From the NCBI GenBank assembly GCA_964187785.1, contig OZ076414.1:34038001-34102000 (forward strand): a stretch of 64,000 bases of DNA. The letters run 5' to 3'. Below, piece by piece: positions 35,501 to 55,561 of the stretch. The position numbers and the translations under genes are program-made. Below the pieces are notes generated by a model. The model made no database searches, was not told the origin of the DNA, and was given only the letters and a program-made list of their open reading frames with translations. Every line of letters starts with the position of its first letter. The first letter of the stretch is position 1. Origin of the DNA: Amphiscolops sp. MND2022. Its lineage: Eukaryota.

Positions 35501-36005
35501 GTCCGAAACGTTTGTGCCAAAGTTGTGCCTCGTTTGACCCCCACTCAAATTCGCAAAGTGGTTTCCTTGCTTTGGGGTCATGCGTAGAAAGAAAAGATTT
35601 CCTTTTCTTTTAATGGGGAATTTCTCTTTGCTTTTGAGGCAAAGGAAATTGTTTTTCGCATGGTGAACAACTGTGTGTCCATTGTCTACAATACGCGATA
35701 CCGAGATTAGGTTAGTTCGGTATCCTGGCACAAATAAAGCTTTTCTGAAAACTAAAGACTTAATTTTCCCCTTTAAATCTTTGGCTAAGACCTCGACTTC
35801 TCCTATTCCTAGGACTTTCGTGTTACCTCCATCGGGATTGGTAACAGTCGTTTCTATTTCTTTGAGGTTTTTGAACCAGTTTTTGTTCACTATTACATGA
35901 TCTGTACTTCCTGAATCTACAACTAGATCCTTTGCTGTTGCCTCACTTGATCCTCCTGACTTGAGACTTGATGCTAAGCTACCGTGCTTGCCTCCCTTGG
36001 AATTT
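32534..36005 (-). pseudogene. pol: Copia pol (PR, GAG-pre-integrase, IN, RT, RNase H) with 2 frameshifts and 1 nonsense codon
   Basis: PR: LVVDSGSTDH. WHKRFGH...CETC. IN: SDVVGP, RSDNG.EY, QNGVAER. RT: QMDVKSAYL, WVDD. RNase H: SDADW, EAEY, EDNQ, DLLTK. The RT-RH ORF 32534-34585 is intact. Confidence 0.93.
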
Positions 36006-36905: not shown

Positions 36906-37107
36906 TTCAAGTTTTTTCGAACCTACTAAGCTCAGCCGATAGTTTATTTTTTCTATCGTTGAGTAGTGCAATGCTAACCTCCCAGTCACAACCTGTCTAA
37001 ACCGGAACCGGGTTAGCTACTCAACGGCTGAGACCCTACTAAGCCTTTTGAATTAGGACGTGGGATCTACTCCCCCTAGATTGATTGGACAGCTTAATTG
37101 CCTTTCG

Positions 37108-38409: not shown

Positions 38410-40483
38410 TGTAAAGGTTCGATTGGGTTTAGGAGAAATTAGCCTTCTGAGATTCTTGATCAATAGTGTTTAGGAGTTAGTTTGCGACTATGCCTTCCTA
38501 AACCTTTACAAAAGTTGTCTCTAGGTCTTCCGAGTTCGCAGGAAGGACTTTGTTTCGAGAGAAGAGTTTGAATATATGAAAAGAATTTGAATTAGTTCGA
38601 GTATTATATTCAACAATGTTTGTTTTTACACAATACGCAAGAATACAATACAAACAGAATAATGTAATCATCCAAGTTGACACAAATATCCAATCAATAA
38701 TATCTGAATTGCTTAGCATTCACCACAAATAAATACATCAATTATTTAGGGAGCAATGTTCAGGTAAGTTGTTTAAATACTATAAAAACTGGAATTTTCT
38801 GATCTTATTGTCCAACAATTTGGTTAGGACAAGTGTGCTGACTTTTGGCCAGAATTCCAGTCTATTCAGACCGGTTTGGGGTTCCTAGAGTTCTCAACAA
38901 TGTAGTGAGAGTTACTAAGTCTATTGACAATTTACGTGAAAGGTTTGTCACACGTTCTAGCTTATAGGAAGCGAAGAACTAGCTTATAGGAAGCTGAGAG
39001 TTAAATAAAATAGTTTTAGCCTATATGACCAGCCAATTACTAGGTCGAAGACAGGGTTGTCTTGAGCATAGACTTATAAGAAGTCTTGCGAATCTAAGTA
39101 AATTAAAGGTCTTATCTAACCAGCATTCGCTAGGTTTTTGTTCGGACAAGATTGCCGATTGGGCTCGATCCAGAGGTTCGGTGCCGTGTTCTAAGAGTTT
39201 TAACCTATTGCAATGGACCAGCAAGTTTGCTAGGTCGAGAGGAAGACAAGTTTGTCTAAAGACTTTGAAGAAGTCTTGTGAGTCTAAGTGAGTTAAAAGG
39301 CCTTATTTCAACCAGCAGTTTGCTAGGTTGCTTTTTAGACAAGATTGTCAGAATTCTGTTCAATACTTTATAAGGTTACATGCATTTTACTTTTTAATCA
39401 GTTTGTTTTACTTGCAAGTTAGCTGCAGTTATTGAGATGATCTAGACTAGCAGTCGCTAAGTCTTGACGCAATCGCGTACTAAGAGGAAAGTGATCTCCG
39501 TCGAGAATTGTTTGGGAGCGTTTAGCTCTAGTTAGTTTTCCCTATGATTTTCATAGGAGAACCTTGTCGGTTGTTTGTCTCTTCAGTCACTAGGACTGGG
39601 GGTTGTCTATAAAAGACAGGTAGGAAAAGGGAGCAAAGAAAAAAGAGAAAAATTTTGAGTTGTGAATTTTGAAGTTATTTTCTAAGTTAAAGAAAATAAC
39701 TAACCTGAAGTTTGAAGCAAAGATTGGGTCGGAGAGATTTGTTCTCGCAAGAGAGAGATTTTTTGAGTGAGATGATTTATAGCAGAGGCGAAGAGGAGAG
39801 TCAGAGTGAGAGTGTGCGAGGGATTTATGCGAGAAAATTATATCTCAATTTGCTAGAGTCCGGCTTTTTATACGAGCCGACCGAACGGTACAACCAATCA
39901 AATCGATTGGCGTTTTTTATTGGATACGAAATTATTTCGTCATTATCTCGTCAATATTTTGTCCATAATTGGAATCGCATTCACTATTGGATGCAACCGA
40001 ATAGAAGTCGGCGGGGATTGCATCAGCTACCGAATATGTTCGGCTAACCGAGTTGGCTGACGCAACTCTTTGTATTTGTCAGGGGAATTAATCCTCTCAA
40101 GTGGGGGACTTTGTTCCCACTTGAGAATTCTTTTGTTTAAAATTGAGAATTTGGCCGTACAAGTGGCGCCTATTATTCTCTTTTCAGAGATATTTACTGG
40201 CACAAGTGGCGTCGCATATTGTCTTTTCAGGGGAGATAAAAGATAATTGTTTGCACAAGTGGCAAGCGTTTTCTTTCGTAGAGGGGAATTCTCCCTTTCA
40301 TATGACGCGCAGCTGTAATTTTGTTTATCTCTAAAATTCTTTCGAGCGTGCCTGGAGAATTGAAAGAATTTGAGTAAGAGTTCACAAAAATTGAATAAAA
40401 AAAATTCTAGCTCCGATTGAATAATTTTCTAAATATGTTTTTTCAAATATTAAAATGAAGAAAAAGTTGTGTTAAACATAACA
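38410..40483 (-). repeat. 3' LTR of giant element (2,074 bp)
   Basis: Direct repeat of 55562-57635, with internal duplications (16-bp ctagcttataggaagc x2; an ~190-bp-period degenerate pair). Confidence 0.96.
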
Positions 40484-40485
40484 AC

Positions 40486-41259
40486 TCACCCGGGGTTTAA
40501 GAATGATTGAGTTGAAAGGGGGGCATTCAGGGTATTTATGACTTTTACTTCGAAAAATATGGAATTGTTTTTTAGCCAGGGGTTCTCTGGGTTCATGAGT
40601 TCATCATGTGGGATGAAGCACAAGATGGTGATTGCTGTGTTGCTGGCTGTGGGAATAGGTTTCTTGAAGCACTCACTGTTATTGTTATTCGTCACAATGA
40701 GTTGTTTGTAGGGTTTGTAAATATTGCCTTGACCAAGGAGGTGTATCTCGATAACGCCTTGGAAGGGCCAAGTGAGTATCTCATCGTAGGGTCCCGGACA
40801 CATAGCCAAGCATACTGACATGTATTTCCCTTTGGCAGTGTCGATGCCATAAGGGTAAGCTCGTAGATGAAAGGTGTACCCAAAGGGTTGTGAGAAGAAG
40901 ATAGGGCTACAGACGTCTTTTAGGCTATTAGGATCACAATAGGGTGCTCTTACATGAGACAAACTTTTTTCGTATTTTTCAGCATTCTGAAAAATATCAG
41001 AAAATTGATCAAGCCTCCAAATAATTTTGTAGAGGTTCCAATCCCGTGGAATTGATTTCTTTTCGATACGAAGGACTCGCATCTCAAGTGCGTCGAGCTT
41101 TTTACTGATCTCGTGTATCATATCAGAATCAAATGTGTCATCTTTATATTGGGTGATATTGAGTTTTTGTCGAAGCAATAGTAACTCATTGATTAGGGAG
41201 TCCGTAAGGGACCTTTCATCTTCCAATTGTTCAATAAGGGTAGATGAGCTTGTGTTCAT
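40486..41259 (-). CDS. TRAF-like protein (coiled coil + TRAF-C/MATH domain, no RING or zinc fingers), 257 aa
   Basis: IIWRLDQF...SPIFFSQPFGYTFHLRAYPYG...GKYMSVCLAMCPGPYDEILTWPFQGVIEIHLLGQ...FKKP...FIPHDEL...LKNNSIFFEVKV follows the TRAF-C consensus strand by strand. Heptad-rich residues ~8-68. Confidence 0.92.
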   Translation of the reverse strand: MNTSSSTLIEQLEDERSLTDSLINELLLLRQKLNITQYKDDTFDSDMIHEISKKLDALEMRVLRIEKKSIPRDWNLYKIIWRLDQFSDIFQNAEKYEKSLSHVRAPYCDPNSLKDVCSPIFFSQPFGYTFHLRAYPYGIDTAKGKYMSVCLAMCPGPYDEILTWPFQGVIEIHLLGQGNIYKPYKQLIVTNNNNSECFKKPIPTASNTAITILCFIPHDELMNPENPWLKNNSIFFEVKVINTLNAPLSTQSFLNPG

Positions 41260-41295
41260 CTTGATAGGTCGTTCTGAAATTCAATGGAAAAGACT

Positions 41296-41805
41296 TTAAA
41301 TAAATGCTGAAATAGCTCTAATAGGTACCACAATCCTCTGGTAGCCTAGGGTCGGATTTTCCAATGTAAATTCTTGACGGTTAGAATCCCAGAATACAAT
41401 ATTCCAAGGATTATATTCGCGTTTCAAAAGATAATTTAATTCGGTCCGGAATCGTGGGTTCCTGGTGAAAATATATTTATTAGCAGCTTCCTCGTTTTTT
41501 CGTTGTTGTCGTAGTTTCTCGTGAGCCGAGAGGGAAGCTTTTTGCCTTTTATGAGAACGCTTAATGGACGTTGAATGAGGTCGTTTAGTGGGTAGGGGTG
41601 TTGTTTTTAAGTTGTTGCGCGGAGGAGGTGGTGCTGTTTCAGTAACACCTTCTGCAATAGTTTCCGTTGAGAGAAACTCTAAATCTGTTGGGGAAAGCAA
41701 GGGGAGATCAAGTAGTCCGCTGTTGTCGAGTTTTGGTTCACCTGTTAATAACTCGATTTCTTCAGCCACAGTTTTGTCGGTTTGCATATTCTGAATACTA
41801 AACAT
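41296..41805 (-). CDS. Accessory ORF-D, ~163-169 aa: acidic N-terminus, Pro-rich linker, basic NLS-like stretch, small C-terminal domain
   Basis: Long ORF on the element's coding strand between env and TRAF. The acceptor tttagtattcAG (41791) lies just before ATG 41787 (MQTDK). Confidence 0.75.
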   Translation of the reverse strand: MFSIQNMQTDKTVAEEIELLTGEPKLDNSGLLDLPLLSPTDLEFLSTETIAEGVTETAPPPPRNNLKTTPLPTKRPHSTSIKRSHKRQKASLSAHEKLRQQRKNEEAANKYIFTRNPRFRTELNYLLKREYNPWNIVFWDSNRQEFTLENPTLGYQRIVVPIRAISAFI

Positions 41806-41815
41806 AAAAATACAA

Positions 41816-43924
41816 TTACACCGGAGAAACAGTATGGGTATTCGAAGTAGGGGGCCTACTTATGGCAGGGTAAATGTGTTCGAGGGTTTCGTGCTCATTG
41901 TAATTTTTGTCTGGAGGGGTATCTGAGACCATTGGGTCATGTTGGGGAACTTGATTAAGTGTTGATATCATCGAAACTGTGAATAGATTGTAGGTTGCTG
42001 ATAGAAGTATTTTGCCAATACCCCAAGAAGCTCCTGTAACTCGGTGTAGTTCAAATGAGCGAAATGTTATAACAATCACATTGACCAAAAACTTGATAAG
42101 AAGAAATCCACCAAACCACTGTCCCAATTTGCTAAACCAGTATTCGATAATACCAAAAGTGCTGATGAACTGTTCCTTGAAATATCCTGGTGATATCATG
42201 TTATCCACATAGAAATTTGTACGTGGTGCAAAGTAACCAAATTCGTCTGGTCCTTTGTCGGCAGCTGAAGGTATAATGAGTTCTCGTGAAAACTTTTGCA
42301 AGGCATTCCTCGAAGCCGCGCTGATCAGAATATTGTCCCAAAAATCGCTGAGTTGTCCTTTTGTGTACATTCCAGCATCTTGAGACTCATCGAAAGCATC
42401 TTTTGTGAAAGGAGAAATCTCTTTCGGACCGAAGATAGCAGGTCTATCTCTATGTGTAGGCTCTGGATTTAAAGAAAACCAAGAGTCCTTGTCTTGCATA
42501 TCTAGTTGAAAAAGGTTCTTTATTCTATCTGTGCAATTTTGGGTATTTGCGTTAGGGTAGGTTTGTCTGGTGATGGGGTCTACGAATTGAATTTGTCCCT
42601 TGTAGAATATGGGTATTTTGTCATAACAATTGTTCATGACATGAAGAGGTGATGAAATCAGTGGGCATGAATAGAGCCAGGCGAGACTACCATCAGTTTC
42701 AAGGAACATGGATCTATTTCCAGTAAGCATGTATCCAGCAAGGCGTGGATTTTCCAAAGACAGCATTAAAATAGTTAGAATTTGGGTTCGTTCCTGTTCG
42801 CACTGGTTTTTCAACATTTGAATTTCGGAAGATTGCAGTGCTCGGGTGCTTTCGAAGAACAGGTAATCCAGTTTTGTTCAAACTTGCATTTCATAATCCA
42901 TGTTGAGCCAAGTATTAACGTACTTGTCTTTAACTGTGGCATCTCTGTTGTACACGTAAAGTCCAGGTTTCCCAGAATTGTCTGTGGAGTATTGGAGGGT
43001 ATAAGATCCTCTTGTTATCCCCATCTTTCTTCCGGAGGCCATGTCAAATCCACCGGTATGTATCACAATGTACATGGACTCGTAATTTGTGGGATATACG
43101 TCGTTTGGTTTGTTGCAGAATTTTTGAGGGTAGTTCTTCACTTCGAACAAAAATTTGGAGGAGGAATCGTTGGTGCTCACCATGTGATACCTGTGTTCAT
43201 TTTTTATCATATTCACATGTTCTTCTTTCAATACTGAAAGTACACAGTTATCTGGGTGATCCCAAATATAGGCGTAGGGATCCAAGGATGTGCTTTGGCA
43301 ACCCAGATCGTCAAGTTTGCATGGGAGAGGATTTCCATTTACATTGTGAACTGTTCCATCTCTCAGCTTGACGGGTAGGGTAACATCTTGAATGTGACTC
43401 TCAAAAGTATCTTTGATCATCCAAGACCTTCCAGTGCAATGGTTTCTGTTTTCTTCGCTCTTCTTTCCGTTCGTATAGGACTGAGTTAGTTTGTTTCCCT
43501 TTTTAAACTGGACCATGTGATCCAATATTTGTATCTTTCCCTCTTCTCGTGCTCTTCGACATTGTTCGGGGCTCAAATCGATATCGCTAGTTATTGTACT
43601 TTGTTCTGCATCGATACTCGCATGGTCATGATATCCACAATGCCATTTGAATCTACTGTGCTTTAGGCGGCACATAGTGGCATTGAGTTCTGTACGAAAG
43701 TGCTTCGTGTAGACAGTGATTATGGCTGGGTTGATTTCAATATTTTCTGGGGAAACGTGGCAGGGTCTCACTTGATTGAGCGCATATAATTTGTTTTCGG
43801 TCATTTCTCCACAATCATAGTGCGATACACTAAGCCTTTGTGCGATGTCATCCAGGTTTGGATTGGGGAGGCTATTGATTAGGGAGTAGCACGTAATGAA
43901 TAATATCAAAATTTTACTGCACAT
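41816..43924 (-). CDS. env: Envelope glycoprotein, chuvirus G / herpes gB-type class III fusion protein-like; 702 codons with one in-frame TGA (42878-42880)
   Basis: N-terminal signal peptide. Cys pattern YDC..., CRLKHSRFKWHCGYHDH, SPEQCRR, LPCKLDDLGC, KNQCEQER...ENPRLAGYML, CYDKIPI...DPITRQT...QNC. N-glycosylation sequons and C-terminal hydrophobic segments. The two listed ORFs are in the same frame. Confidence 0.85.
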
Positions 43925-44037
43925 TTTGGAACTAACTGGGGGAAATCTTAGGTGTTTGCCAGAGCTCAGTTTTCAGAGGGGCAAACTGTTAAGAAGAAAA
44001 AATCAAAAAGAGGAAAGTTAAACGGTAGCTTGCTAAC

Positions 44038-44189
44038 CGAGAGTTGGTGGAGTCGAATTTGACAACCAGTTAGAATCAAATTGATTCTATTGTTGAAGAA
44101 TGTTCTTCAGAAACGAGAGTTGGTGGAGTCGAATTTGACAACCAATTAGAATCAAATTGATTCTTTTGTTGAAGAATGTTCTTCAGGAA
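44038..44189. repeat. Two 76-bp direct repeats, each with two palindromes, upstream of env
   Basis: Units at 44038 and 44114; each has agaatcaa-a-ttgattct and gaagaa-tg-ttcttc. Confidence 0.9.
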
Positions 44190-44503
44190 CTGAAACGAGA
44201 CAATTATTGTCTAACGTTTTCAACCAGGGTGAACACCGAATTTGGATTTGATAGCTTGCTAACCAAAAATAGGTGTAGTCACAGTGATCACTGCTTTAGA
44301 TTTGAGATTGGTGCACAGGTCTATGGATTGAAGATTTCAGTGTCTGGCTCAATTGATAGCCGTTTTCATAAGTACTGAAAGTACACTCTGTTATCAGAAG
44401 TGAAGTTATGGAATTTGGGATTTGAAGTGAAAGTTGAGAAAGAGGATCGTAAAATTTTATTTACCAAACAAAAATTTATTTCAAAACGAAAATGAGATGA
44501 AAT

Positions 44504-44968
44504 TTACAAATCATAAAACTGGATAAGATCCTTGTACAATTTGCTATATTTAGGTGAAGTGACACACTCAATGTCCATGACACTGGTTAATTCACCTAAC
44601 ACAAGCAGATCAAATTTGGTGATGTGCCTTTCAGGTCTCTGTTCGTATGACAGGAGGGAAGCTGCTAGTGACGCGTATAGAAGGGTGTCCTTGTAGATTT
44701 GTTTCTGATACTTTTTGTCAGGCAGGTCGTAACGTTCAAAGTGAACGCAAATCTTGAATTCGTAGGTCCAAGTCCACCGAATATAGGTGATCAAAAATTG
44801 TTTGTTGTTTTCAGCAACGAAAATAGTCCAGGGGCAATTGAAACTGAGTTCTTCGTACTTTTTCTCCCAGAGGGTATCCAAGTAAATAGTAGGAGGAGGA
44901 TAAATTTGAGTAATCCTCGGTTTTGTTCTTTTGCGTGAGTCTTTTTTGAGAATAGACTGTGGGTTCAT
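44504..44968 (-). CDS. Accessory ORF-B, 154 aa from MNPQSILKK (paralog of ORF-A)
   Basis: Starts in the TAATG overlap. Followed by two AATAAA (44480-44475, 44461-44456). Motifs align with ORF-A. Confidence 0.8.
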   Translation of the reverse strand: MNPQSILKKDSRKRTKPRITQIYPPPTIYLDTLWEKKYEELSFNCPWTIFVAENNKQFLITYIRWTWTYEFKICVHFERYDLPDKKYQKQIYKDTLLYASLAASLLSYEQRPERHITKFDLLVLGELTSVMDIECVTSPKYSKLYKDLIQFYDL

Positions 44969-45186
44969 TAGAGATGGTTGTTTTCTCCTCTGAACAAATC
45001 CGAAGGTTTGTCTCCCACAAATTTCATAAGGTGGAGAAAATAGTCCCAATATACTGAATGTTGATCTACAAAAACAATATCTTTTTTCGAGGTGATGTAG
45101 TGCTTTACATAGATATAGATTCTGTCTTGATGCAGCTCAGTTCTATAGATCCGGTAGAATTCGTTTTCAATTTTGATGTAGGTCAT
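44968..45186 (-). CDS. Accessory ORF-C, 72 aa (MTYIKIENEF...), unknown function
   Basis: ATG 8 nt after the acceptor ttttgactatttcAG (45195). Its TAA overlaps the ATG of ORF-B (TAATG). Confidence 0.65.
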   Translation of the reverse strand: MTYIKIENEFYRIYRTELHQDRIYIYVKHYITSKKDIVFVDQHSVYWDYFLHLMKFVGDKPSDLFRGENNHL

Positions 45187-45214
45187 ACGACGAACTGAAA
45201 TAGTCAAAAGTTTT

Positions 45215-45642
45215 TTACCCACGGCAGAGATTGATACTATGATCGTTACCGTGCTGAAAAGTTATTTACCCACGGCAGAGATTGATACTTTGATCGTTAC
45301 CGTGCTCGTTTTTGTGAAAAATTCTTTACCCACGGCAGAGATTGATGCTATGATCGTTACCGTGCTGAAAAGTTATTTACCCACGGCAGAGATTGATGCT
45401 ATGATCGTTACCGTGCTGAAAAGTTATTTACCCACGGCAGAGATTGATGCTATGATCGTTACCGTGCTGAAAAGTTATTTACCCACGGCAGAGATTGATA
45501 CTTTGATCGTTACCGTGCTCAATTTTGTGAAAAAGTTATTTACCCACGGCAGAGATTGATACTATGATCGTTACCGTGCTCAATTTTGTGAAAAAGTTAT
45601 TTACCCACGGCAGAGATTGATACTATGATCGTTACCGTGCTC
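45215..45642. repeat. Tandem array of 8 units (51, 60 or 61 bp), each containing an imperfect inverted repeat
   Basis: Units start at 45215, 45266, 45326, 45377, 45428, 45479, 45540 and 45601; core cacggcagagattgatactatgatcgttaccgtg. Confidence 0.95.
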
Positions 45643-45748
45643 AAGAATTTCTGAAACGAAGGACTACAAATTAGTTATCAGTTTACGTTAAAATGACAAT
45701 GAAGAGAAGAGAAAAAGAATTTTGACAAGAAGACTTTTATTTACAATA

Positions 45749-46159
45749 TTAGAAATCTTCCATTTCCTGCCACAGCTTTAGAGTTTCAAGGAAATCAATG
45801 TACATATCATTGTAGCTCGAGTTTTTACAAACATTGTCCATCTGGCTAGAGATGGTGTTGAGAGCGTCGACTTCTTGTTTTGATAGCTGTGGTTCGGGTT
45901 TCCTCATGAACGTTACTAACGCCGCAGTGAGGGACACATAAAGGAATGAACCGGGTTTGACCCATTTGTGGTATTTTTGTTTGGACCGGTAGTTATGGAA
46001 TTTAACTTCTACATCAGCAGTTGGGTGCCAACTCCAACTTAGTTCTTCGATGATCATCGAGATTTCTTCTAATTCGGGCATGATATTCCAGGGGCAGCAT
46101 TTGAAATTTATTTTGTTCATAATCACAATAGGGATGTCGTACGCAATGACGGGCTTCAT
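45749..46159 (-). CDS. Accessory ORF-A, 136 aa, unknown function (paralog of ORF-B)
   Basis: ATG preceded by a tttcAG acceptor (46176), AATAAA 7 nt after the stop, and clear collinear similarity to ORF-B. Confidence 0.8.
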   Translation of the reverse strand: MKPVIAYDIPIVIMNKINFKCCPWNIMPELEEISMIIEELSWSWHPTADVEVKFHNYRSKQKYHKWVKPGSFLYVSLTAALVTFMRKPEPQLSKQEVDALNTISSQMDNVCKNSSYNDMYIDFLETLKLWQEMEDF

Positions 46160-48549
46160 CTTTGGTTGGCTTGGGCTGAAATTTGGTCAAAATAGATACT
46201 AAGGCACGAAAATGCTGCTTGACTTACTTTGTAAAATTTAAACAAATTTTACAATTGCAAGAGCTGGATTTTTCAAAAAGTAAAATTTCATACTATTGTT
46301 TTTGTTCTTTTCACAAGGTTCTCCTTTAACAAGGCTTTGTCTTGTTTTCTTTTGTTTGTCTACTTCTTTTGTTTCCTTTTGTAGTCTTTATTGAATAGAT
46401 TCTTGCATTCTTTTGTTTTCTACATGCTTTTGTTGTTACATGCAGTGGTTCCTTTTGTAAACTCCTTTCAGTTGTTGACTTTTGTTTTTCGTTTTCTATG
46501 GTTTGCATCACTGGCTTTCATCGGCTTGTTTTGTAAAGATCGCGCTTTTGTTGTTGGATAACGGCGGGTGCCATATGTGTTTTTGAAGTAGAGTGTTGAA
46601 GTTAGCTTTGTATTGAATGCGCTTTTGTTATGGTTCAGTTCTTTTGGTGCCATGTGTTTTCGAGTGGTTTGAAAAGTTGTTTGTTCACAATGTGCTTTTG
46701 TAATGGTTCAATTCTATGGACGCCATGTGTGTTTTTGAAGTGGTGGCCCAAATTCGGTTTGTGTTGAATGCGCTTTTGGATGTTAGTCTGATCTCTTCAC
46801 ATTTACAAGTAAGTTCGGTTTTCATTTTCAACTTTTGCTTTTTCTTGAATTTTTGGTAACGTGTATATGACACGCTCGACCGCCGAAAAAGAAGTAGAGA
46901 AAAAGGTTTGAGCCATATGGTGGTGAAGATTGGAGAGAAAGAAATGAAAGAAAAGCAATTTTGAAGAACGGAGTGGAAAATGGGGGAAATTTTTAAACGG
47001 CATAAGGGGGGTGGTGAAAACGAAATTTGAGGTTGTAATTTAGTTGCGTTTCTTTAGGCTGTTTTAGTACACGATGAACCGTTTGCCATTTTCTACCGCG
47101 GATGATGCTTATCTGGCACCAGATCTTTTTGCGGATATGCGATTATTGGTGACTGATTTGGAACTACCAATGATGGCGGGGACGACAGCGGTGGGCGAGG
47201 TGTTGCGACGCCCAGAACCACTCCGGAGAGCAGTGAGATTGGCGTTAGGCGAGCACGTAAGTTGTTGAGTGGTGTAACTTGTGAAGCTAAGACATTGTGG
47301 AGAAGAGATTTTGAATTAGTTCTTAGCACTAAGAGTAAAAAGGAAATGGAAAGTATTGTCTTTAGCTTCGATTGTAAAAGTTCTGTAGTTGCAGTTTCTA
47401 AGTACGATAAGGTAAACAGAGACGGAAATGTTTGTGAAATTAATGTTTTTGTGTATTGATTGCAGTTTGTTTTAGTGGAGATCGAAGCTACAGTCCGGAG
47501 CCAAGGACGTTTGGATTTTTAAACTAAAAGCCATTGTACGGGGGTGGGAGATGACTGCTCCACAAGATCGGCCGGACATAGCCCGACGGCTGGATCGGAG
47601 TCAGTTTTTTCAAGTGCTGCAGGACTTGGCGGAGTTGGGGGGATATATGGTGTGCCTCTGCGCGGGGCATCCTAAGCCGCCTCCAAATGGGGCGACTGTT
47701 GTCCCTTCCGAAAGGGAAGATTTATTATAAACTTGTATATATTGTAAATATTTTGTTTTTGTTATTTTAATATTTTAATTTTATTTTGTAATACTTTTGT
47801 TTTAAATTTGAGTTTTTAAGTTGTAGGGTGAAAAGTAAGAGAACGGTTTTTGACGGTTATAAATTCGAAAAGTTTAGCTGGAGGAGAAGGATTAGCTAAA
47901 ACTTTGAGCAATCGCCTCTGTGGGGGCTTGTTGATTAAAACATCAACAGTCACAGTGCTATCTATTCCAGGCAATTCGACCATTTAAGGCGAACCGCCAT
48001 AGCACAATTTTTCTTTGTGGTTTTTGTCTCTTGAGAAGACTTGTTGAAGAAAACCGTCAACAATCACAGTGGCATCTATTCCAAGCAGTTCAACCATTTA
48101 AGGTGAACCGCCGTACCACAAAATTTTTGTTGTCAGAGTGGGTAGTGATCCGATTTAGAATTTTCGCAAAAAATCTCGGGATTCAGTAAGGTGTACTAAA
48201 AGGGTATACCAGTGAAGTGTAGGTTATTGCTAATTGTCTCGTAATAGTTTTGTGGTTGTTGTATCCAATGGGTCATTGTGGAGCAACTTTGTTTGTAACT
48301 ACGTAAGAAAAAAAATTGAAGTTTTTTGAAAGGGAAACTCTTTTTGTTGTGTCTCAAGACGAAAAATGTTTAGGAGTGTGTTCGGAGGCTTCCTGGTGAG
48401 TCTCATTACACGGTGAAGTGTGTTTAGTTCCGTACTATACAAGTTTCAAGTTGTGACGATGAGGAAGTAGTTCGCGCTTATGTACGGAACTGAGAATTGA
48501 GAGGTGTAGAAAAATGTGACATCTTGTTATTGTTATTTTTATTTTGATT

Positions 48550-51500
48550 TTAATCTTTATAACCTTTCCGTTCTATATCCCTGAGAGAACTACCAGGGGT
48601 GCTTCGTTCGTATTTGGGGTCTTTGGGTTTTTCGGAAAACCGTGTAGATACTTTCTTTTTGAAGTTTGATAACTTTCCTGTTTTTGGGGAAATTTGGTCG
48701 GGGGGAGGCACTGTGTGGATAGGAGGGACGGATGGGAGAACCGGCGTTCTCTTTGGTAGGGGAGTGTTAGAAGAGAAAGCGAGCGGCAAAACTGCCATTG
48801 GGAGGCGTGGTGTTTGCATAGGTGGGAGTGGGTTTGTTTTACAACTTTGAGGGGTACGTTCCCCTGGAGCGGTGTTGCTAGAAGTAGATGGGATCGGGGT
48901 GTGAAATTGTGGTGTTTTCGGGGAAAGGAATCCAGAATCAGTACTGGGGGAAAATTCTGAACCTTTAGAAGTATTGTTACTCGGTCCTGAAAGGGGGGTT
49001 ATGATAAGTGGCATAAAATCTAGTTTATGCTCAGGTTGTCCCGAGTTGTGTTTGTCAATTTGAGTTTGGATCAAATGCTTGTAAAAATTATCGTCCTGTT
49101 CTACGGGAGCGTAATTTGTCAGCAATGGGGGTAAAGTTTCCTCTTTGGGAAAATACTCTAGTAAGTGGTTTCGGTGAGTTACTTTAACATTTTCGGGGTT
49201 CTCATCTTCTTTAATCTCGTATGTGGTATTGGTTATTTGTTTTGTTACCGTGAAAGGTCCCACTCGTAATTGTTTCAATTTCTGTGATTTGGATAGGTCG
49301 GGTTTGTGATTCTCCAATAGGACTTTTTGACCAACCGCGAGCGGTCGTCCTAGTTTGAAACGGTTCCGATACTCATGAGCTTTCGATGTGATTTCTCTAC
49401 ATCTTTTGTAGGTAGATGAGTATATTGATTTGAAATCGTTTTCTCTTGTAAGTAGTTCGGAAGATAACTGTGGTCTAAGGAGTCGGTCGAGGGACTTGTT
49501 TCTGAGGTTATTCTCACTATGGGTGTGGGGTTGTAAATCTGCACAAAATTCTGATTTACATTGTTTGTTTTTGTCGCGAAATAGCCCAAGTTTCAAAGTC
49601 ATCGGTATCTGAGGTTTGACGCCGAAGACAATCTCGTAGGGGGTCATACCCGTTGTGTAATTTACACTTGTGTTATGGGCAAAAGCGAATTTAGATGCAA
49701 GTGTTGACCAGTTGTTTCCTGACTCATTGGTGAAATTCCTCCAGTATCTCATGAGGTGTTTGTTTTGGACTTCAACTTTGCCATTTGTCCAGGGCGAATA
49801 AGCAGTGCGCGGTGCCAGCGTTATTCCGAACTCTTTGGTCCAATTTACAAAATCACGGTTGATAAACGCTGAGCCATTGTCGTGGACGATTTTTTGGGGA
49901 ATGCCGTAGGATGTGATCCATTTTTCTAGGGCATTGATTGTAGTCTGGGCTCCTGTATCTCGGACCGGATAGACTCCAAGAAATCTTGAGAATGCATCTA
50001 CTACAACTAGACAATGTGTATTCAGGTTACTGCTTGGTCTGATGGGACCTTTGTGGTCGATATGGATTGTTTTGAAGGGGGTTGTCTCGAGTTCGCCCCA
50101 TTGTTCAAGAGGAGCTTCTTGTAGATCGTGTCGTTTAGACTTGTTAGTCTGGCATTGTAGACAATCTTCTATCAGGGATACTATCCACTTATATCGTCCA
50201 GGCCAAAAGAAGTTTTGTCTGATGTTTTCGAATGTTTTAAATATGCCTGGGTGGCCACTGTGAGTATGAGCGTGGGCCAGATTAAAGAGGGGTAGGAATA
50301 ATGATAAGGGGACACAGATTTTCATTTCGTATTTGTCCGTTCCATGAATAGGTTCGTTATAGCAGAGTAGGTTGCTTTCTTTATCGAGAAAAAGTTGGTT
50401 GAAATTGTTGAAGTACGATAGCAAAGCCTTCGATTGGTGGATCTCTGGTGTTTTGGTGTTCGGCTTGTTCTTGTTTCTAACCCAAGCTCGTACAATTTGT
50501 AATACAGGATCGTTGATTTGTTCTGCAACTAAGGTGGTGATGTCCAAATCAGCGGTTTTAGAGTAATCGCTGAGTTTTTGTAAGAGGTCTTTGGTATCAA
50601 CGTGTGGGAATTGCTCGACATCTAAATTCTTGTTCAATAGAGGCCTTTCACTTTTCTGTGAAATGTTCTTTTCTTTCGCAGTTGATTTATCGCGATAGAA
50701 CTCGTGGTCTTCGCTGGAAAGGTGAAGTTCGGCGACTTCCTCTTCATCGTCACTGGAATCGGTTTCGATGTCGTCAATTCTACTATACTCGGGTTCATAC
50801 TGTATTTTGTATGAGGGTAGACAGAGGTTTTTGTATTGATTGATGGATTTTCCCAGTTTGAAACAGTCAGCGATGTCTTGGCGAGTCGCCATTACTGTTT
50901 GTTGGTTCTCATAGTGTTCTACTTCATGTTCTTCTCCGTCATTCTTGAGATGGAGTAGCCTTTGATCTTTGCCTTTTTGGCAGAGGATAGGGAAAAAGTC
51001 ATTGCTGCCACAATGACCATCGTCATTATGCTCGATTGCATAGTGTATTTTCGATCCAAATTCATCATAGAAACTGATATCTCGCGGTATCTCTTTGTGT
51101 AGTTTTTGTAAGTTTTTGGTTTCTTCCAGCGTGACATTTCTACTAAGTATGTCTGGAAATGCGAGGTTGGATCCTTTAGTCCAGATGATTTTGAGGTTTT
51201 GGAACTTGGTGATGATTACCTGATACTTGAAAAAGCGATGTGAAAGCTGTCCTTTTCTTCCCCAGAGGTATAAAATAGGTTTGTGATCGCAATAGAGGTA
51301 TATTGGAAATGGAGATCCAATAATGTAGTGTTCGTATGTTTGGAGTGCTGATACTATGCCACACAATTCGCGATGAAGGGTGGACATCTTTTGTTCAGCT
51401 TTGTCAAATACGCGGGAATTGAAAGAAACTATCCTTTTTCCTTCTGGAAATTGTTGAACTAGTATACAACCAGTACCAACGTTCGAAGAATCGACGTGTA

Positions 51501-52570
51501 TGTGGAAGGGGTACTCAGTTGAAGGGACAGCAAGAATAGTGTCCTCACATATACGACTTTTTATATCAGTGAAGAGGTCTTCGTGTTCTTTCGTCCATTT
51601 GAAAGGCGTTGTAGCTTTTATCAAATCGTAGAAGGGCTGGCTATCCACGTGTAAGTTTTTGATATAGCAACTGTAAAATCCAAGACAGCAAAGTACTTTC
51701 ATCACATCTCTTTTACTTTCGGGTGATTTTAAGTTTTTTAGATCCTGTACTCTTTTTGCTAAGGGTTGTATTCCTTGTTCAGAAATAACATGTCCTAGGA
51801 ATTTGACTTTCCTGATGAAGAAATTCGTCTTCTCAGGTGCAGCTTTAAGTCCGGCTTTCCTCAGGAGCTGATGGTACTCATGAATTATCGTGAACATTTC
51901 TTGTTTGGTCTGAGCCTGCATAAGACTGTCATCAAGATAGGTGATAGCTTGTTTTCGCTTGATGAGGGGCTCAAAATGTATAGCCATGAGACGGCTAAAA
52001 AAGTTTGGAAGTCCACAGAGTCCGTAGAAACCGCGTACATACGTGTATTGTTTTCCGCCGATAATAAAACTAGTGAGTTTTTGGGTCTCGTCGCTCAAAG
52101 GTACTTGGTGATATGCGCAGGATAAATCGCTGACCGTGAAGTACTTTCCGTTAATTCGAGTCATAATCATCTGAATGGGTTCCAATGGCCACGAGTAATT
52201 TGTCAGATCTGTTATGGAGTTTAAGTAGCGGGCGTCGATTACTAACTTTACGTAGTCTGCTTTGGGCATCAGAATGATCGGATTGACAAAAAGGGAACCT
52301 AGTTCGTCATCGTCTCCCATTTCTCTAATGATATCGGCTTCTTGGATTCGTCCAAGTAACTTCTCAAGTTTGTCCTTCAAGTGAAGGGGTACTTTGCTTG
52401 GTCGTTGTTTCTTGAGTTCTGAATTGGCTTTGAGTGTTACGTGAAATTTTTGACGTACTTTTCCCACGTCAAATTTGTGTTGTGAGTACACGTCCGCTGA
52501 GTCAATAAGCATGTCTATCAAGACAACCAATTCTTCATCTTCGAGGTCAGTATATCGGAAATCGAATTTC
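48550..52570 (-). CDS. pol: Pol part 2: RT, RNase H, linker insert, integrase (HHCC, DDE, GPF), Pro/Ser/Thr-rich tail
   Basis: YLDD at 51939-51928. RNase H: VDSS, ELCG, CDH, PD. IN: HAHTHSGH...CLQC, IDHKGP, HDNG, GKVE, VGPF. Joined to part 1 by a -1 shift near 52570. Confidence 0.95.
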
Positions 52571-54137
52571 TTTCATATTCCTTGATTTCCTCAGGCTGAT
52601 ATTGGAGATAGTAATCAATTAGTGCGTCATTGTCTTCTTTTGCTCTAAGCTCGACAAATTGTTCTGTACAGGGTGGCTGACACGATTTAGCATCCGTAGC
52701 AAAATTTGTTTCAAGTTCTTCAGTACCATTAGCAAATTGTTCTGTATAATAGTCAATATCTCCTTCTTCTACTTCTTCTTTTCGTATGGAAGCGTTAACA
52801 AATTGGAGGTTCGGTTCGTTTCGTGATACGATCTCGACTTTAATATGTCCATAATCGAAGCTGTTACGGATTATGTCCAAAGCTCCTTTCCAGTGAATGT
52901 TATCTAAGCCATCTTCAATTTTGGGTATTGAAATTGCAGGTATATTGTTTAGTTGTGCGTGTCCAACCAAATTTTCGATGCAACTGCGAAAATCTTCGGG
53001 TTTAATTTTTTCGTAACATCTCTTTTTTGCAACTAGTCCATAGATGAAGCGACTGGCTTCGTTATCCCAAAAGGGTAAAACTGATCCGACGAAAGGTTTC
53101 GACTGGTTCACGAAATTCTGAAAATCTTTCTTCTGTTCGCACAACCTTTTTGCGAACGTGGTTGTCATTTTTCCATCTGCTGAGACACAAAAGGCTAGAT
53201 TTGCATTTGAGGCTCGAAGGGTCTCGCCGGAGCCGTGGCTTAGAAAAACTTGTTGATCTCCTTCGTGTTCGAAGGGAACTGTTGAGTGTAGCAAGAAACA
53301 GTCGTTGTAGTCTGGGTTTTCCTTTAAAATTGTGTTGACCATCGTGACGCAATCCTTTATCTGGAACTTTGGTCGTTCTTTTTCCTGTAGGTCTATGATA
53401 GCATGACCAATTATTCCTCTATTAAGGGTTATTTGGTGATTTCGATTATTTTCAATCAAAATTGGCAGGTGGGATTCGGACTTCGTACATAAAACATTCA
53501 CAAAGGTAAGTCCTGTTTTGACTGCATTTTTGTGGGGTGTGAATGATGTTCCGGGTGCAAAATGTCTGTTATTTTCGCGGGAGTACTTGTGTAGGCGGGT
53601 AGTTTTGGCATCGATGCAAATTGGGTTATCTGTTCGTATTGTTTCGACCTTTGAAACGTATGGGAAAGGTTTGGTAGCACAAAGGTTACCGTAGCAAATC
53701 GTGTTAGGACTGTCTTTCAATTCGATTGCAGGCAAATCAAAATGTAATTTAGAAACAAGTTGACGGCAGAAATCTATTCCCAGTAAATTGGGTGTCTTCG
53801 CTTCTGTTATCCAAAACTTTAGCTCTACAGGATGGAGTCCATCCGAGTCGAAACTGAATGTGATTGTTGTTGATCCAAACATCGGTATAACTTCACCAGT
53901 ATAGGTTTTAGTCAGTTGTTTGCTCCTGACTACCGTGATGGGTTGTCCAAACTGTGCAATTTCCTCAAAAGCTCTGTAATTGATGATTGAACAGGCTGCT
54001 CCTGTATCTAGCATGAATTCTATTTCTAACCCACTATCTTTTTTGGAGTCTCCGGTGGGAAAAAAGAAGAGATTTAGGTGAAAACGTGATTTGAGGTTAC
54101 TTTCTTCGTCAGGTCGCGGAGACTTTAGCAGTTTAAA
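52518..54137 (-). CDS. pol: Pol part 1: aspartic protease, dUTPase-like remnant and TARG1/Poa1p-like macrodomain
   Basis: MLDTGA...LLGIDF protease. Macro region 52827-53249 (AFCVSADGKM...FIYGLVAKKR...ISIPKIEDGLDNIHW). Confidence 0.88.
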   Translation of the reverse strand, partial: FKLLKSPRPDEESNLKSRFHLNLFFFPTGDSKKDSGLEIEFMLDTGAACSIINYRAFEEIAQFGQPITVVRSKQLTKTYTGEVIPMFGSTTITFSFDSDGLHPVELKFWITEAKTPNLLGIDFCRQLVSKLHFDLPAIELKDSPNTICYGNLCATKPFPYVSKVETIRTDNPICIDAKTTRLHKYSRENNRHFAPGTSFTPHKNAVKTGLTFVNVLCTKSESHLPILIENNRNHQITLNRGIIGHAIIDLQEKERPKFQIKDCVTMVNTILKENPDYNDCFLLHSTVPFEHEGDQQVFLSHGSGETLRASNANLAFCVSADGKMTTTFAKRLCEQKKDFQNFVNQSKPFVGSVLPFWDNEASRFIYGLVAKKRCYEKIKPEDFRSCIENLVGHAQLNNIPAISIPKIEDGLDNIHWKGALDIIRNSFDYGHIKVEIVSRNEPNLQFVNASIRKEEVEEGDIDYYTEQFANGTEELETNFATDAKSCQPPCTEQFVELRAKEDNDALIDYYLQYQPEEIKEYERNSISDILTSKMKNWLS

Positions 54138-55519: not shown

Positions 55520-55540
55520 TCTTCTCTTTTGCTTGAATGT

Positions 55541-55558
55541 GCCTCACTGGTCGCACCA
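55541..55558 (-). promoter_or_regulatory. Primer binding site of giant element
   Basis: TGGTGCGACCAGTGAGGC, 3 nt after the LTR. The implied tRNA 3' end GCCUCAC-UGGUCGC-A-CCA has a T-arm like elongator tRNA-Met or tRNA-Ile(UAU); this assignment is inference. Confidence 0.8.
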
Positions 55559-55561
55559 GTT

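What the first reader, a model, noticed from the sequence alone, without database searches (positions are those of the whole stretch)
41274..48300. A 3' splice site precedes each accessory unit: complex-retrovirus-like splicing programme
Minus-strand acceptors lie 3-62 nt before the start codons: ttttgaccaaatttcAG (46176; ORF-A), ttttgactatttcAG (45195; ORF-C/ORF-B pair), tttttcttcttaacAG (43986; env), tttagtattcAG (41791; ORF-D) and ttttccattgaatttcAG (41274; TRAF). A sixth candidate is ttttttttcttacgtAG (48299). Candidate donors are CAG|GTTAGT in the 5' LTR (56856, closing an ATG-free leader of ~130 nt after the TATA box) and AAA|GTAAGT at 46227. One leader spliced to many acceptors would express each gene, as in HIV or adenovirus late units.
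Basis: partly seen in the sequence, partly recalled or inferred. Interest (0 to 1): 0.82.

Follow-up and report, generated by a model that had tools for sequence, protein, structure and literature searches.

The report
Splice signals in an invertebrate endogenous retrovirus

Summary
All eight quoted motifs are at the stated coordinates on the minus strand. They lie in a 19,226-bp Ty3/gypsy element (38410-57635) with 2074-bp LTRs differing at 4 bases, a class III env, paralogous ORF-A/ORF-B, ORF-C, ORF-D and a TRAF-domain gene.

Relatives from three assemblies give a mixed verdict.

- **Well supported:** the LTR donor (56856), which is a better match in every relative; the ORF-D acceptor (41791); and the TRAF acceptor (41274).
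- **Moderately supported:** the env acceptor (43986), lost in the two closest copies but matched in two deep lineages, with a conserved alternative at 44190; and the weak ORF-A acceptor (46176), kept in its only comparator.
- **Weak:** the ORF-C acceptor (45195), for which 45651 is the conserved alternative.
- **Not supported:** 48299 and the donor at 46227.

The strongest new evidence is that three lineages have an ORF-D frame of over 200 codons with no ATG. That frame opens exactly at a strong acceptor. ATG-free stretches and overlapping stop/start codons (TAATG for ORF-C/ORF-B) point to polycistronic translation as well.

No transcript evidence was found. Verdict: partly supported; a new variant of a known kind.

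The parts
38410..57635 (-). Whole LTR retroelement (19,226 bp), flanked by a 4-bp target-site duplication GTTA
   Evidence: Offset comparison of the two LTRs and their flanks
55562..57635 (-). 5' LTR (2074 bp, TG...CA)
   Evidence: Differs from the 3' LTR at 4 of 2074 positions
38410..40483 (-). 3' LTR
57018..57024 (-). TATAAAA box; CCAAT (57075-57071) and ATTGG (57050-57046) lie upstream
   Evidence: Sequence; conserved in six LTR copies of relatives
56857..56995 (-). Predicted ATG-free leader exon. The start is inferred from the TATA position; the end is fixed by the donor.
   Evidence: ATG-free stretch 57095-56706. The leader varies in sequence and length among relatives while its two ends are conserved.
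56851..56859 (-). 5' splice site CAG|GTTAGT (first intron base at 56856)
   Evidence: Donor score 9.3, the only strong donor in the LTR and leader. It reads (A/T)G|GTAAGT in L008, L009 (two LTRs) and L010 (two LTRs).
56748..56856 (-). Probable short leader intron inside the LTR. The first AG after the pyrimidine tract is at 56760-56759 in this copy; the conserved AG is at 56749-56748.
   Evidence: Alignment of LTRs. The host has introns of this size: 87 nt in the EML gene.
55541..55558 (-). Primer-binding site, 3 nt after the 5' LTR
   Evidence: Sequence; identical in L003 and L011
54125..55519 (-). gag (464 aa, CCHC knuckle), intact
   Evidence: Pfam Retrotrans_gag, 21.2 bits, below the cut-off. 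The CCHC motif was read directly. A 304-nt ATG-free stretch lies upstream.
48550..54014 (-). pro-pol (protease motif, RT, RNase H, integrase), interrupted once by a frameshift in this copy
   Evidence: Pfam RVT_1, RT_RNaseH_2, Integrase_H2C2, rve and Integrase_p58_C. A 99%-identical relative, P0023, is one continuous 1821-aa ORF.
46160..48549 (-). 2.4-kb spacer without a long ORF, with internal repeats. It holds the unsupported candidate acceptor at 48299 and donor at 46227.
46176..46193 (-). Candidate acceptor for ORF-A (…aaatttcAG), 16 nt before the ATG
   Evidence: Weak score of 4.1. The AG and tract are kept in L008 despite a 10-nt indel just downstream.
45749..46159 (-). ORF-A (136 aa), paralog of ORF-B
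   Evidence: BLASTP ORF-A against ORF-B: 29% identity, E 1.5e-14
45206..45707 (-). Tandem repeats (units of about 51 and 111 nt) between ORF-A and ORF-C, ATG-free
45651..45668 (-). Conserved alternative acceptor for the ORF-C/ORF-B unit (…cgtttcAG)
   Evidence: Score 8.4. Kept in L008 and L009. Followed by an ATG-free run to the ORF-C ATG.
45195..45212 (-).
   Evidence: Score 6.5. The AG is kept in L009 and is AA in L008.
44968..45186 (-). ORF-C (72 aa from the ATG)
   Evidence: Coding sequence conserved in L008
44504..44968 (-). ORF-B (154 aa from the ATG). Its ATG overlaps the ORF-C stop as TAATG.
   Evidence: B-like ORFs occur in L003, L005, L006 and L011.
44190..44207 (-). Conserved alternative env acceptor (…cgtttcAG), 265 nt before the env ATG with no ATG between
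   Evidence: Aligned acceptors in L008 and L009
43986..44003 (-).
   Evidence: Score 12.4. The AG is lost in L008 and L009. A tract, AG and the same downstream motif are present in L011 and L012.
41816..43924 (-). env, class III (gB/chuvirus-like) fusion glycoprotein, interrupted once by an in-frame stop in this copy
   Evidence: Pfam PF24664 on both pieces, searched apart. Intact at 700-729 aa in relatives.
41791..41808 (-). ORF-D acceptor (…agtattcAG), 3 nt before the conserved ATG; a second AG lies at 41798
   Evidence: Scores 9.4 and 10.0. YYCAG is kept in all four close relatives (five copies), with equivalents in L004, the L003 group, L011, L012 and the reverse element of L009.
41296..41787 (-). 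ORF-D (163 aa from the conserved ATG) with no ATG triplet in any frame
   Evidence: The upstream ATG at 41805 is not conserved. 0 ATG against 7.1 expected. 55 representative clusters in the family.
41274..41291 (-). TRAF acceptor (…gaatttcAG), 14 nt before the ATG, in the ORF-D/TRAF spacer
   Evidence: Score 9.2. Homologous sites in relatives score 9.2-16.0, with the tract changing base by base but staying pyrimidine-rich.
40486..41259 (-). TRAF-like gene (257 aa: coiled coil + MATH, no RING or zinc fingers)
   Evidence: Pfam MATH_2 and TRAF-mep_MATH. PDB TRAF1, TRAF5, TRAF2 and TRAF3 TRAF domains, E about 1e-12.
40484..40491 (-). Polypurine-type tract GGGTGAGT abutting the 3' LTR. It scores as a donor but is not one.
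   Evidence: the same motif lies next to the LTR in L003, L011 and L012

Best explanation
The region is the 3' half of a recently inserted, env-carrying Ty3/gypsy endogenous retrovirus of an unidentified animal. Downstream of pol it carries five extra reading frames: ORF-A, ORF-C, ORF-B, ORF-D and a captured TRAF-domain gene.

Proposed mechanism:
1. Transcription starts about 30 nt after the LTR TATA box.
2. An ATG-free leader of about 135 nt ends in a conserved 5' splice site at 56857|56856.
3. That donor either removes a short leader intron inside the LTR, or is joined to host-type 3' splice sites further down. This would give a nested set of 3'-co-terminal mRNAs.
4. The acceptors most likely to be real are those before ORF-D (41791), TRAF (41274) and env (43986 and/or 44190). 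Those before ORF-A (46176) and the ORF-C/ORF-B unit (45651 or 45195) are plausible.
5. Splicing is combined with polycistronic translation. ORF-B would be read by termination-reinitiation at TAATG. TRAF would be read at least partly by scanning through the ATG-free ORF-D.

Shown: the signals, their conservation, and the ATG-less ORF-D frames in relatives. Inferred: every donor-acceptor pairing and every translation step.
For: **Element anatomy.** Established.

**Promoter and donor.** The TATA box, CCAAT boxes and donor are conserved in six LTR copies of relatives. The leader between them has diverged and carries indels. The donor is closer to consensus in every relative. It is the only strong donor in the LTR and leader.

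**ORF-D acceptor.** It is kept in all four close relatives, five copies counting both L010 units. L004 and the L003 group have equivalents. The ATG just upstream of it is not conserved and is out of frame in L004, so coding does not explain the conservation.

**ATG-less ORF-D.** In L011, L012 and the reverse element of L009 the ORF-D homolog is an open frame of over 200 codons with no ATG. It is 236 codons in L011, 207 in L012, and in L009 carries one stop. Each frame opens in phase 0 directly after a strong pyrimidine-tract TAG. L011 and L012 share an ATG + two codons + donor motif upstream of env, which is frame-compatible with that acceptor.

**TRAF acceptor.** The AG is kept in all close copies. 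The tract keeps 12-15 pyrimidines of 16 while individual bases change, and scores run from 9.2 to 16.0.

**env.** Acceptor position and downstream motif are shared with L011 and L012.

**Host comparison.** Real host splice sites are of the same type and strength.

**ATG-free stretches.** ORF start codons are preceded by unusually long ATG-free stretches (permutation p = 1e-4).

**Precedents.** Errantiviruses express env from a spliced mRNA (PMC4276936). Cer1 expresses an accessory protein from a five-exon mRNA (PMC10309623).
Against: - No transcript evidence. All relatives of TRAF come from genome-type ENA assemblies, and no near-identical RNA-derived contig was found for TRAF or env.
- The splice-site matrices are my own rough values.
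- The ORF-A acceptor is weak (4.1) and has one comparator.
- 45195 is lost in L008. 43986 is lost in L008 and L009.
- The proximal LTR acceptor could capture the donor, so distant pairing is unproven.
- In L011 I found no strong donor in the LTR, and the L012 LTR scan showed none placed just after a TATA box, so the plan differs between clades.
- The L003 group's ORF-D and TRAF sites score low (3.1-7.2).
- ATG depletion of ORF-D argues that TRAF does not rely only on its own acceptor.
- This copy has one break in env and one in pro-pol, so it may not be expressed at all.
Confidence: 0.55

Rival explanations
1. Minimal splicing plus translational tricks. Only one or two subgenomic mRNAs exist, for example one entering before ORF-D or env. 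The remaining ORFs are reached by leaky scanning or termination-reinitiation. Most of the quoted pyrimidine-AG motifs are not used.
For: - ORF-D contains no ATG in any frame between its start and the TRAF start (0 against 7.1 expected). Relatives have 0-1 against 4-7 expected.
- ORF-C stop and ORF-B start overlap as TAATG.
- L012 has TGATG at the ORF-D/TRAF junction, and the L003 group has 2 nt between stop and start.
- The ORF-A and ORF-C acceptors are weak.
Against: - The ORF-D/TRAF spacer of the close relatives and of L004 keeps a strong acceptor while its bases change.
- ATG-less ORF-D frames need at least the ORF-D acceptor.
- ORF-A has internal ATGs, so scanning cannot pass it.
Confidence: 0.25
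2. Internal promoter, as in foamy viruses. The env-to-TRAF block is transcribed from a promoter inside the element, and the acceptors serve only short local introns or nothing.
For: L011 and L012 share an invariant 30-nt block with a TATA box and a CRE-like palindrome. It is preceded by tandem repeats and lies about 170 nt upstream of env.
Against: - That block is absent from the window.
- No TATA box lies in the 445-nt ATG-free stretch before env in this copy.
- An internal promoter does not explain the conserved LTR donor or the ATG-less ORF-D frames.
Confidence: 0.1
3. Spliced-leader trans-splicing. The acceptors 3-16 nt before the ATGs are trans-splice sites of a polycistronic precursor, as in nematode or flatworm operons.
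For: Short acceptor-to-ATG distances of 3, 8, 14 and 16 nt, and tightly packed ORFs, resemble trans-spliced genes (established knowledge of nematode operons).
Against: - The host is unidentified and no SL RNA was found. Rfam found nothing in the window.
- A conserved cis donor sits in the LTR.
- The host EML gene shows ordinary cis introns.
Confidence: 0.05
4. No programme at all. The motifs are chance matches in an AT-rich, silenced and partly broken copy.
For: - 48299 and 46227 are not conserved.
- The ORF-A and ORF-C sites are within chance on their own.
- env and pro-pol each carry one break.
Against: - The donor, ORF-D acceptor and TRAF acceptor are conserved across copies of 73-86% identity and across deeper lineages.
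- Combining the five non-coding p values by hand with Fisher's method, and setting env at 1/4857, gives about 1e-4.
- ATG-free stretches end at ORF starts (p = 1e-4).
Confidence: 0.05

Closest known systems
Drosophila errantiviruses (gypsy, ZAM, Tirant, Kuruka)
   Same: Ty3/gypsy elements with gag, pro-pol and an env 3' of pol. Their env is expressed from a spliced subgenomic mRNA with a conserved acceptor just upstream of env (PMC4276936, PMC13669377).
   Different: Those have one spliced mRNA, an F-type (baculovirus-like) env and no further genes. This element has a class III env, five further ORFs and several candidate acceptors, and its donor lies inside the LTR.
gB-type env-carrying Ty3/gypsy elements of non-insect metazoans (PMC13524379)
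   Same: GAG-POL-ENV order and a class III glycoprotein env. They are widespread and multicopy.
   Different: A term search of that paper found no mention of splicing, accessory genes, TRAF or MATH.
Cer1 of Caenorhabditis elegans and its CERV protein (PMC10309623)
   Same: A Ty3/gypsy element whose accessory protein is made from a multi-exon spliced mRNA. Its TTTCAG acceptors are conserved between species. The first exons supply the start of a protein whose main exon lies 3' of pol.
   Different: Cer1 has one accessory protein and no env. No homology of ORF-D or ORF-A/B to CERV was tested because no comparator sequence was available from the tools. Here up to five units may be served.
Complex retroviruses (lentiviruses, deltaretroviruses, spumaviruses)
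   Same: It works like them on paper. There is one 5' donor, many acceptors before accessory genes and weak acceptors. In relatives there is a two-exon accessory protein whose start codon sits in a tiny upstream exon, and possibly an internal promoter.
   Different: It is not a member. pol and gag are Ty3/gypsy-type by Pfam and env is class III. No Rev/RRE-type export system was identified.
Bdelloid rotifer LTR retrotransposons with captured extra ORFs (PMC5408684, seen in the listings, not read)
   Same: LTR retroelements that carry additional ORFs beyond gag, pol and env.
   Different: Different ORFs. I did not read how they are expressed.

Membership tests
Ty3/gypsy (Metaviridae) LTR retroelement | Direct LTRs ending TG...CA with a short target-site duplication | tested here: met
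   2074-bp LTRs, 4 mismatches, TG...CA, TSD GTTA
Ty3/gypsy (Metaviridae) LTR retroelement | pol order protease-RT-RNase H-integrase | tested here: met
   Pfam order RVT_1, RT_RNaseH_2, Integrase_H2C2, rve, Integrase_p58_C. Protease is supported only by the D-T-G motif read in the upstream ORF.
Ty3/gypsy (Metaviridae) LTR retroelement | gag with capsid-like domain and CCHC knuckle | tested here: inconclusive
   Retrotrans_gag scores 21.2 bits, below the 24.1 cut-off. One CCHC motif is read in the sequence.
Ty3/gypsy (Metaviridae) LTR retroelement | Primer-binding site next to the 5' LTR and purine-rich tract next to the 3' LTR | tested here: met
   A TGG-initiated 18-mer lies 3 nt after the LTR and is identical in L003 and L011. 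GGGTGAGT abuts the 3' LTR. The primer tRNA was not identified.
env-carrying Ty3/gypsy ('errantivirus' in the broad sense) | env ORF 3' of pol homologous to a viral fusion glycoprotein | tested here: met
   PF24664 hits on both env pieces, E 1e-13 and 1e-22. Intact 700-729-aa relatives exist.
env-carrying Ty3/gypsy ('errantivirus' in the broad sense) | env expressed from a spliced subgenomic mRNA | not testable with these tools
   Only predicted signals are available: acceptors at 43986 and 44190 and the donor at 56856. No RNA-derived contigs were found.
Errantivirus in the strict (insect, F-type env) sense | Baculovirus F-like class I env | tested here: not met
   env matches the class III Monjiviricetes_fusion family instead
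Complex retroviruses (Retroviridae) | Retroviridae-type gag, pol and class I env | tested here: not met
   Pfam gives Ty3/gypsy-type families and a class III env. No retroviral Gag or TM family was hit. No RT phylogeny was made.
Complex retroviruses (Retroviridae) | Accessory or regulatory genes beyond gag-pro-pol-env | tested here: met
   ORF-B, ORF-D and TRAF homologs are conserved in several lineages. ORF-A is a paralog of ORF-B.
Complex retroviruses (Retroviridae) | Several alternatively spliced mRNAs from one major 5' donor | not testable with these tools
   The sequence signals are compatible. No junction was observed.
Complex retroviruses (Retroviridae) | Trans-acting export or activation factor with a cis RNA target | not tested
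   ORF-D has an acidic Leu-rich N-terminal part, a basic stretch and a small beta-barrel. Its fold search was not significant.
Spliced-leader trans-spliced operon | Host SL RNA and SL-bearing transcripts | not testable with these tools
   No Rfam family was found in the window. The host is unidentified.

The most novel reading that the evidence does not exclude
[quoted passage not shown] The plan would comprise:
- an LTR donor and several regulated acceptors;
- in one clade, a two-exon accessory protein (ORF-D) whose start codon is donated by a three-codon mini-exon upstream of env, so that env is its intron, as for tat/rev or tax/rex;
- translational coupling at overlapping stop/start codons;
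- a captured TRAF-domain-only protein that could interfere with host TRAF signalling.
Probability: 0.3. Interest if true: 0.8.

Novelty: new variant of a known kind. Interest (0 to 1): 0.55.

Why it matters
Retroviral complexity, meaning accessory genes served by alternative splicing, is usually treated as a vertebrate retrovirus trait. Among invertebrate Ty3/gypsy elements, the papers I read document single-splice env mRNAs and the Cer1 CERV mRNA.

A large and diverse family would show that the same solution arose outside Retroviridae. Size is indicated by hundreds of env clusters and 55 ORF-D clusters. The family combines env, several conserved accessory genes, conserved splice signals and a captured immune-signalling domain.

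It would also give a natural system for asking how unspliced genomic RNA escapes nuclear retention in such elements. Whether a virus-borne TRAF domain modulates host innate signalling is a second open question. All of this can be tested descriptively once the host and its RNA data are identified.

Tried and rejected
- **Transcript evidence.** Exact and homology look-ups for TRAF, pol and env returned genome-type ENA contigs. Two pol relatives (36-56% identity) and one env relative (37%) carry a Logan source, but none was close and I followed none up.
- **Processed copies.** The LTR-to-ORF-A arrangement in L009 looked like a reverse-transcribed spliced RNA. It is an LTR without a primer-binding site, then 600 nt of unrelated DNA, then a 5'-truncated copy. 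The shared internal deletion of L010 does not have GT-AG ends.
- **Host identity.** No names or accessions came back for any relative. There were no tRNA genes in the loci and no Rfam hits. I can only say it is a metazoan with an EML gene and short introns.
- **Donor at 40489.** It has the best donor score in the element, but I rejected it. It is the purine tract abutting the 3' LTR and recurs there in relatives.
- **The ATG-GTN-GAG-donor motif and the TATA/CRE block of L011 and L012.** Neither is present in the window.
- **Function of ORF-D.** The fold search gave only non-significant SH3, Tudor and integrase C-terminal-domain-like matches, with E above 0.1.
- **Nucleotide alignment of the pol-env spacer to the deep relatives.** It failed because they are too diverged.


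Full report
**1. What is at the coordinates**

They belong to one LTR retroelement, 38410-57635 on the minus strand, 19,226 bp long.
- The two 2074-bp LTRs end TG...CA and differ at 4 positions. They are flanked by a 4-bp duplication, GTTA. The insertion is therefore young.
- An 18-nt primer-binding site lies 3 nt after the 5' LTR. A GGGTGAGT tract abuts the 3' LTR.
- The gene order is gag, pro-pol, spacer, ORF-A, tandem repeats, ORF-C overlapping ORF-B, env, ORF-D and a TRAF-like gene.
  - gag is 464 aa with a CCHC knuckle.
  - pro-pol is RT, RNase H and integrase of Ty3/gypsy type.
  - The spacer is 2.4 kb and has no long ORF.
  - env is class III (PF24664).
  - The TRAF-like gene's stop lies inside the purine tract.
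- Breaks in this copy: env has one in-frame stop. pro-pol has one frameshift, since a 99%-identical relative is a single 1821-aa ORF. gag, ORF-A, ORF-C, ORF-B, ORF-D and TRAF are open.
- The rest of the window is also made of retroelements.
- The source is a 618-kb contig of a metagenome-style ENA assembly.

**2. Is it more than chance?**

I scored sites with rough generic splice-site matrices. The values are mine and are not a trained model.

Calibration came from three acceptors and three donors of the host EML gene. I delimited them by aligning ORF translations to the solved EML1 structure.
- The acceptors score 7.5, 9.5 and 12.7. The donors score 10.5, 2.1 and 9.1.
- They are of the same TTTCAG and GTAAGT kind as the element's sites.

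| Site | Unit | Score |
|---|---|---|
| 43986 | env | 12.4 |
| 48299 | none | 12.0 |
| 41791 | ORF-D | 9.4 |
| 41274 | TRAF | 9.2 |
| 45195 | ORF-C | 6.5 |
| 46176 | ORF-A | 4.1 |

- The sense strand is T-poor, so such sites are rare on it. There are 14 sites scoring 8 or more in 15 kb, against 52 on the antisense strand.
- Against a null drawn only from non-coding sense sequence of the element, the chance of an equal or better site within 70 nt is 0.26 (ORF-A), 0.12 (ORF-C), 0 of 4857 (env), 0.058 (ORF-D) and 0.058 (TRAF). Within 20 nt it is 0.016 for both ORF-D and TRAF.
- Combined by hand with Fisher's method, with env set at 1/4857, this is of the order of 1e-4.
- The donor at 56856 scores 9.3 and is the only strong donor in the 5' LTR and leader.

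**3. Relatives**

A homology search with the TRAF protein found 22 relatives, all from ENA assemblies. Their contigs gave three tiers of comparators.
- **Close copies from the same assembly**, 73-86% identical in DNA from the pol end to the 3' LTR: L008, L009, L010 and L002.
- **A third-assembly copy**, L004, with 59% TRAF identity.
- **Deep lineages from another assembly:** the L003, L005, L006, L007 group with about 36% TRAF identity, and L011 and L012. A second, reverse-oriented element in L009 belongs with these.

All share the env, ORF-D, TRAF module.

**4. The donor**

In an alignment of six LTR copies from relatives, the CCAAT boxes, TATAAAA and the donor are conserved. The leader between TATA and donor has diverged and carries two large indels.
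- W has CAG|GTTAGT. Every relative has (A/T)G|GTAAGT.
- The leader is ATG-free.
- About 100 nt downstream, still inside the LTR, a long pyrimidine tract is followed by an AG. This is 56760-56759 in W. The conserved AG is 56749-56748.
- L009 carries deletions inside this interval. This looks like a short leader intron of host-typical size.
- The donor is therefore real in the comparative sense, but its nearest partner is local. Use with distant acceptors is an inference.
- The L003 group has a weak GTTATG at the equivalent place. L007 has an insertion there carrying GTGAGT. L003 also has a consensus donor 85 nt before gag.
- L011 has no strong donor in its LTR, and in L012 none lies just after a TATA box.

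**5. The acceptors, one by one**

- **ORF-D (41791).** YYCAG followed by AAYATG is kept in all four close relatives, five copies counting both L010 units. L004 and the L003 group have a pyrimidine-AG 4-9 nt before their ATG. The upstream ATG at 41805 is GTG in three copies and out of frame in L004. ORF-D therefore starts at the second ATG, and coding cannot explain the conserved AG.
- **TRAF (41274).** The AG is kept in all five close copies and L004 has an equivalent. The tract changes base by base but keeps 12-15 pyrimidines of 16, with scores of 9.2-16.0. In the L003 group the equivalent TTTCAG lies inside the conserved C-terminal codons of ORF-D, so it is not informative there.
- **env (43986).** The AG is lost in L008 (which has an intact env) and in L009. 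Both share another acceptor that aligns with W 44190, from which no ATG occurs before the env start. However, L011 and L012 have a strong tract and AG followed by the same CCTCTGAA-type motif as W 43986. The position therefore looks ancestral.
- **ORF-A (46176).** It is weak but kept in L008 across a neighbouring indel. It is the only candidate that places the ORF-A ATG first.
- **ORF-C (45195).** The AG is kept in L009 and is AA in L008. A better-conserved acceptor is 45651, at the start of the tandem repeats. It is kept in L008 and L009 and is followed by an ATG-free run to the ORF-C ATG.
- **48299.** It has no counterpart and opens only a 26-codon ORF.
- **The donor at 46227.** It is lost in L008.

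**6. The strongest new evidence**

In L011, L012 and the reverse element of L009, the ORF-D homolog is an open frame of over 200 codons with no ATG at all.
- It is 236 codons in L011 and 207 in L012. The L009 frame carries one stop.
- In each, the frame opens in phase 0 immediately after a strong pyrimidine-tract TAG just 3' of env.
- The protein is conserved with W's ORF-D. Two of these elements have intact env, and L011 has an intact 1795-aa pol.
- These frames therefore need a start codon from elsewhere. Splicing into that acceptor is the simplest source.
- L011 and L012 share, about 290-340 nt upstream of env, the motif ATG + two codons + donor. The donor scores 13.0 in L011. The motif is in phase with the ORF-D acceptor. 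If used, env would be the intron of a two-exon ORF-D mRNA.
- The motif is absent from W, where ORF-D has its own ATG 3 nt after the acceptor.

**7. Signs of polycistronic translation**

- The longest ATG-free stretches of the sense strand end at ORF start codons: 577 nt before ORF-C, 528 nt before TRAF, 445 nt before env and 304 nt before gag. The permutation p value is 1e-4.
- The 528-nt stretch is the whole of ORF-D, with 0 ATG against 7.1 expected. Relatives have 0-1 against 4-7 expected, and more in L010, L011 and L012. That is the signature of ribosomes scanning through ORF-D to the TRAF ATG.
- ORF-C's stop overlaps ORF-B's start as TAATG. L012 has TGATG between ORF-D and TRAF. The L003 group has 2 nt between them.
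- The programme is thus probably a mix of splicing and translational coupling, not one acceptor per gene.

**8. Rivals**

- **Internal promoter.** This is suggested only for L011 and L012, by an invariant TATA/CRE-like block after tandem repeats. The block is absent from W.
- **Spliced-leader trans-splicing.** It would fit the short acceptor-to-ATG distances. There is no evidence for it, and a conserved cis donor exists.
- **Pure chance.** It fits 48299 and 46227 but not the conserved sites.

**9. Comparison with what is known**

- Errantiviruses make env from one spliced mRNA (PMC4276936, PMC13669377).
- Cer1 makes CERV from a five-exon mRNA with conserved TTTCAG acceptors (PMC10309623).
- gB-type env-carrying gypsy elements are widespread in Metazoa. 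A term search of the survey found no mention of splicing or accessory genes (PMC13524379).
- This element is a member of the Ty3/gypsy group and of the broad env-carrying group. It is not a retrovirus in the family sense, but on paper it works like a complex one.

**10. Limits**

There is no RNA evidence. The host is unidentified. The scoring matrices are home-made. The close relatives are not independent of each other. Some comparators are degraded.

Noticed in passing
window 40486-41259 (-): The captured gene is a TRAF domain only: coiled coil plus MATH, with no RING or zinc fingers. Its best solved matches are the TRAF domains of TRAF1, TRAF5, TRAF2 and TRAF3 (E about 1e-12). Relatives range from 248 to 440 aa. 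A RING-less TRAF could act as a decoy in host signalling; this is speculation.
   Followed up: partly
window 45749-46159 and 44504-44968 (-); L011:15688-16029: ORF-A and ORF-B are paralogs (29% identity, E 1.5e-14). The deep relatives have one B-like gene. In L011 it sits between the 5' LTR and gag instead of after pol.
   Followed up: partly
window 41296-41787 (-): ORF-D belongs to a family with 55 representative clusters. Only the C-terminal 70 residues or so are conserved. They are predicted with pLDDT above 90 as a five-stranded small beta-barrel after a long helix. Foldseek's best matches are integrase C-terminal, SH3 and Tudor domains, and none is significant (E above 0.1). The N-terminal part is acidic and Leu-rich, followed by a basic stretch.
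   Followed up: partly
L011 (whole, 17,516 bp): This contig is flagged circular by its assembler name. It holds exactly one complete element with a single LTR. It is either an assembly collapse of the two LTRs or a one-LTR circle. It has an intact 1795-aa pol and a 729-aa env.
   Followed up: no
L011:8414-8431 and L012:9825-9842, with flanks: An invariant 30-nt block with a TATA box and a CRE-like palindrome lies about 170 nt upstream of env. It is preceded by tandem repeats, four units in L012. The reverse element of L009 has triplicated related units. It may be an internal promoter or enhancer.
   Followed up: partly
L003:1403-1805: The leader between LTR and gag is 402 nt, against 42 nt in the window. 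It contains about five degenerate repeats of the primer-binding-site motif, one of which reads as a consensus donor. A further consensus donor lies 85 nt before gag. L003 also has gag fused to the end of integrase by an internal deletion.
   Followed up: no
L010:1098-12656: Two units of the element lie in tandem and share an LTR. Both carry the same internal deletion, which removes ORF-A to mid-env. The junction is not GT-AG.
   Followed up: partly
window 52518-54014 (-) and protein P0064: The ORF that carries the protease motif has about 350 further residues with no Pfam match. One relative's pol (P0064) carries a Macro domain (PF01661).
   Followed up: no
window 16078-16734, 24613-28510 (+), 32534-36989 (-): The rest of the window is also retroelements. 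There is an RT fragment, a second Ty3/gypsy-type pol on the plus strand in a strongly A-skewed stretch, and a copia-type element next to the 3' LTR.
   Followed up: partly
window 44035-44186 and 45206-45707 (-): Tandem repeats sit exactly in the two ATG-free untranslated stretches before env and ORF-C. The 76-nt env-proximal repeat duplicates the conserved acceptor module, and only the first copy keeps the AG.
   Followed up: partly
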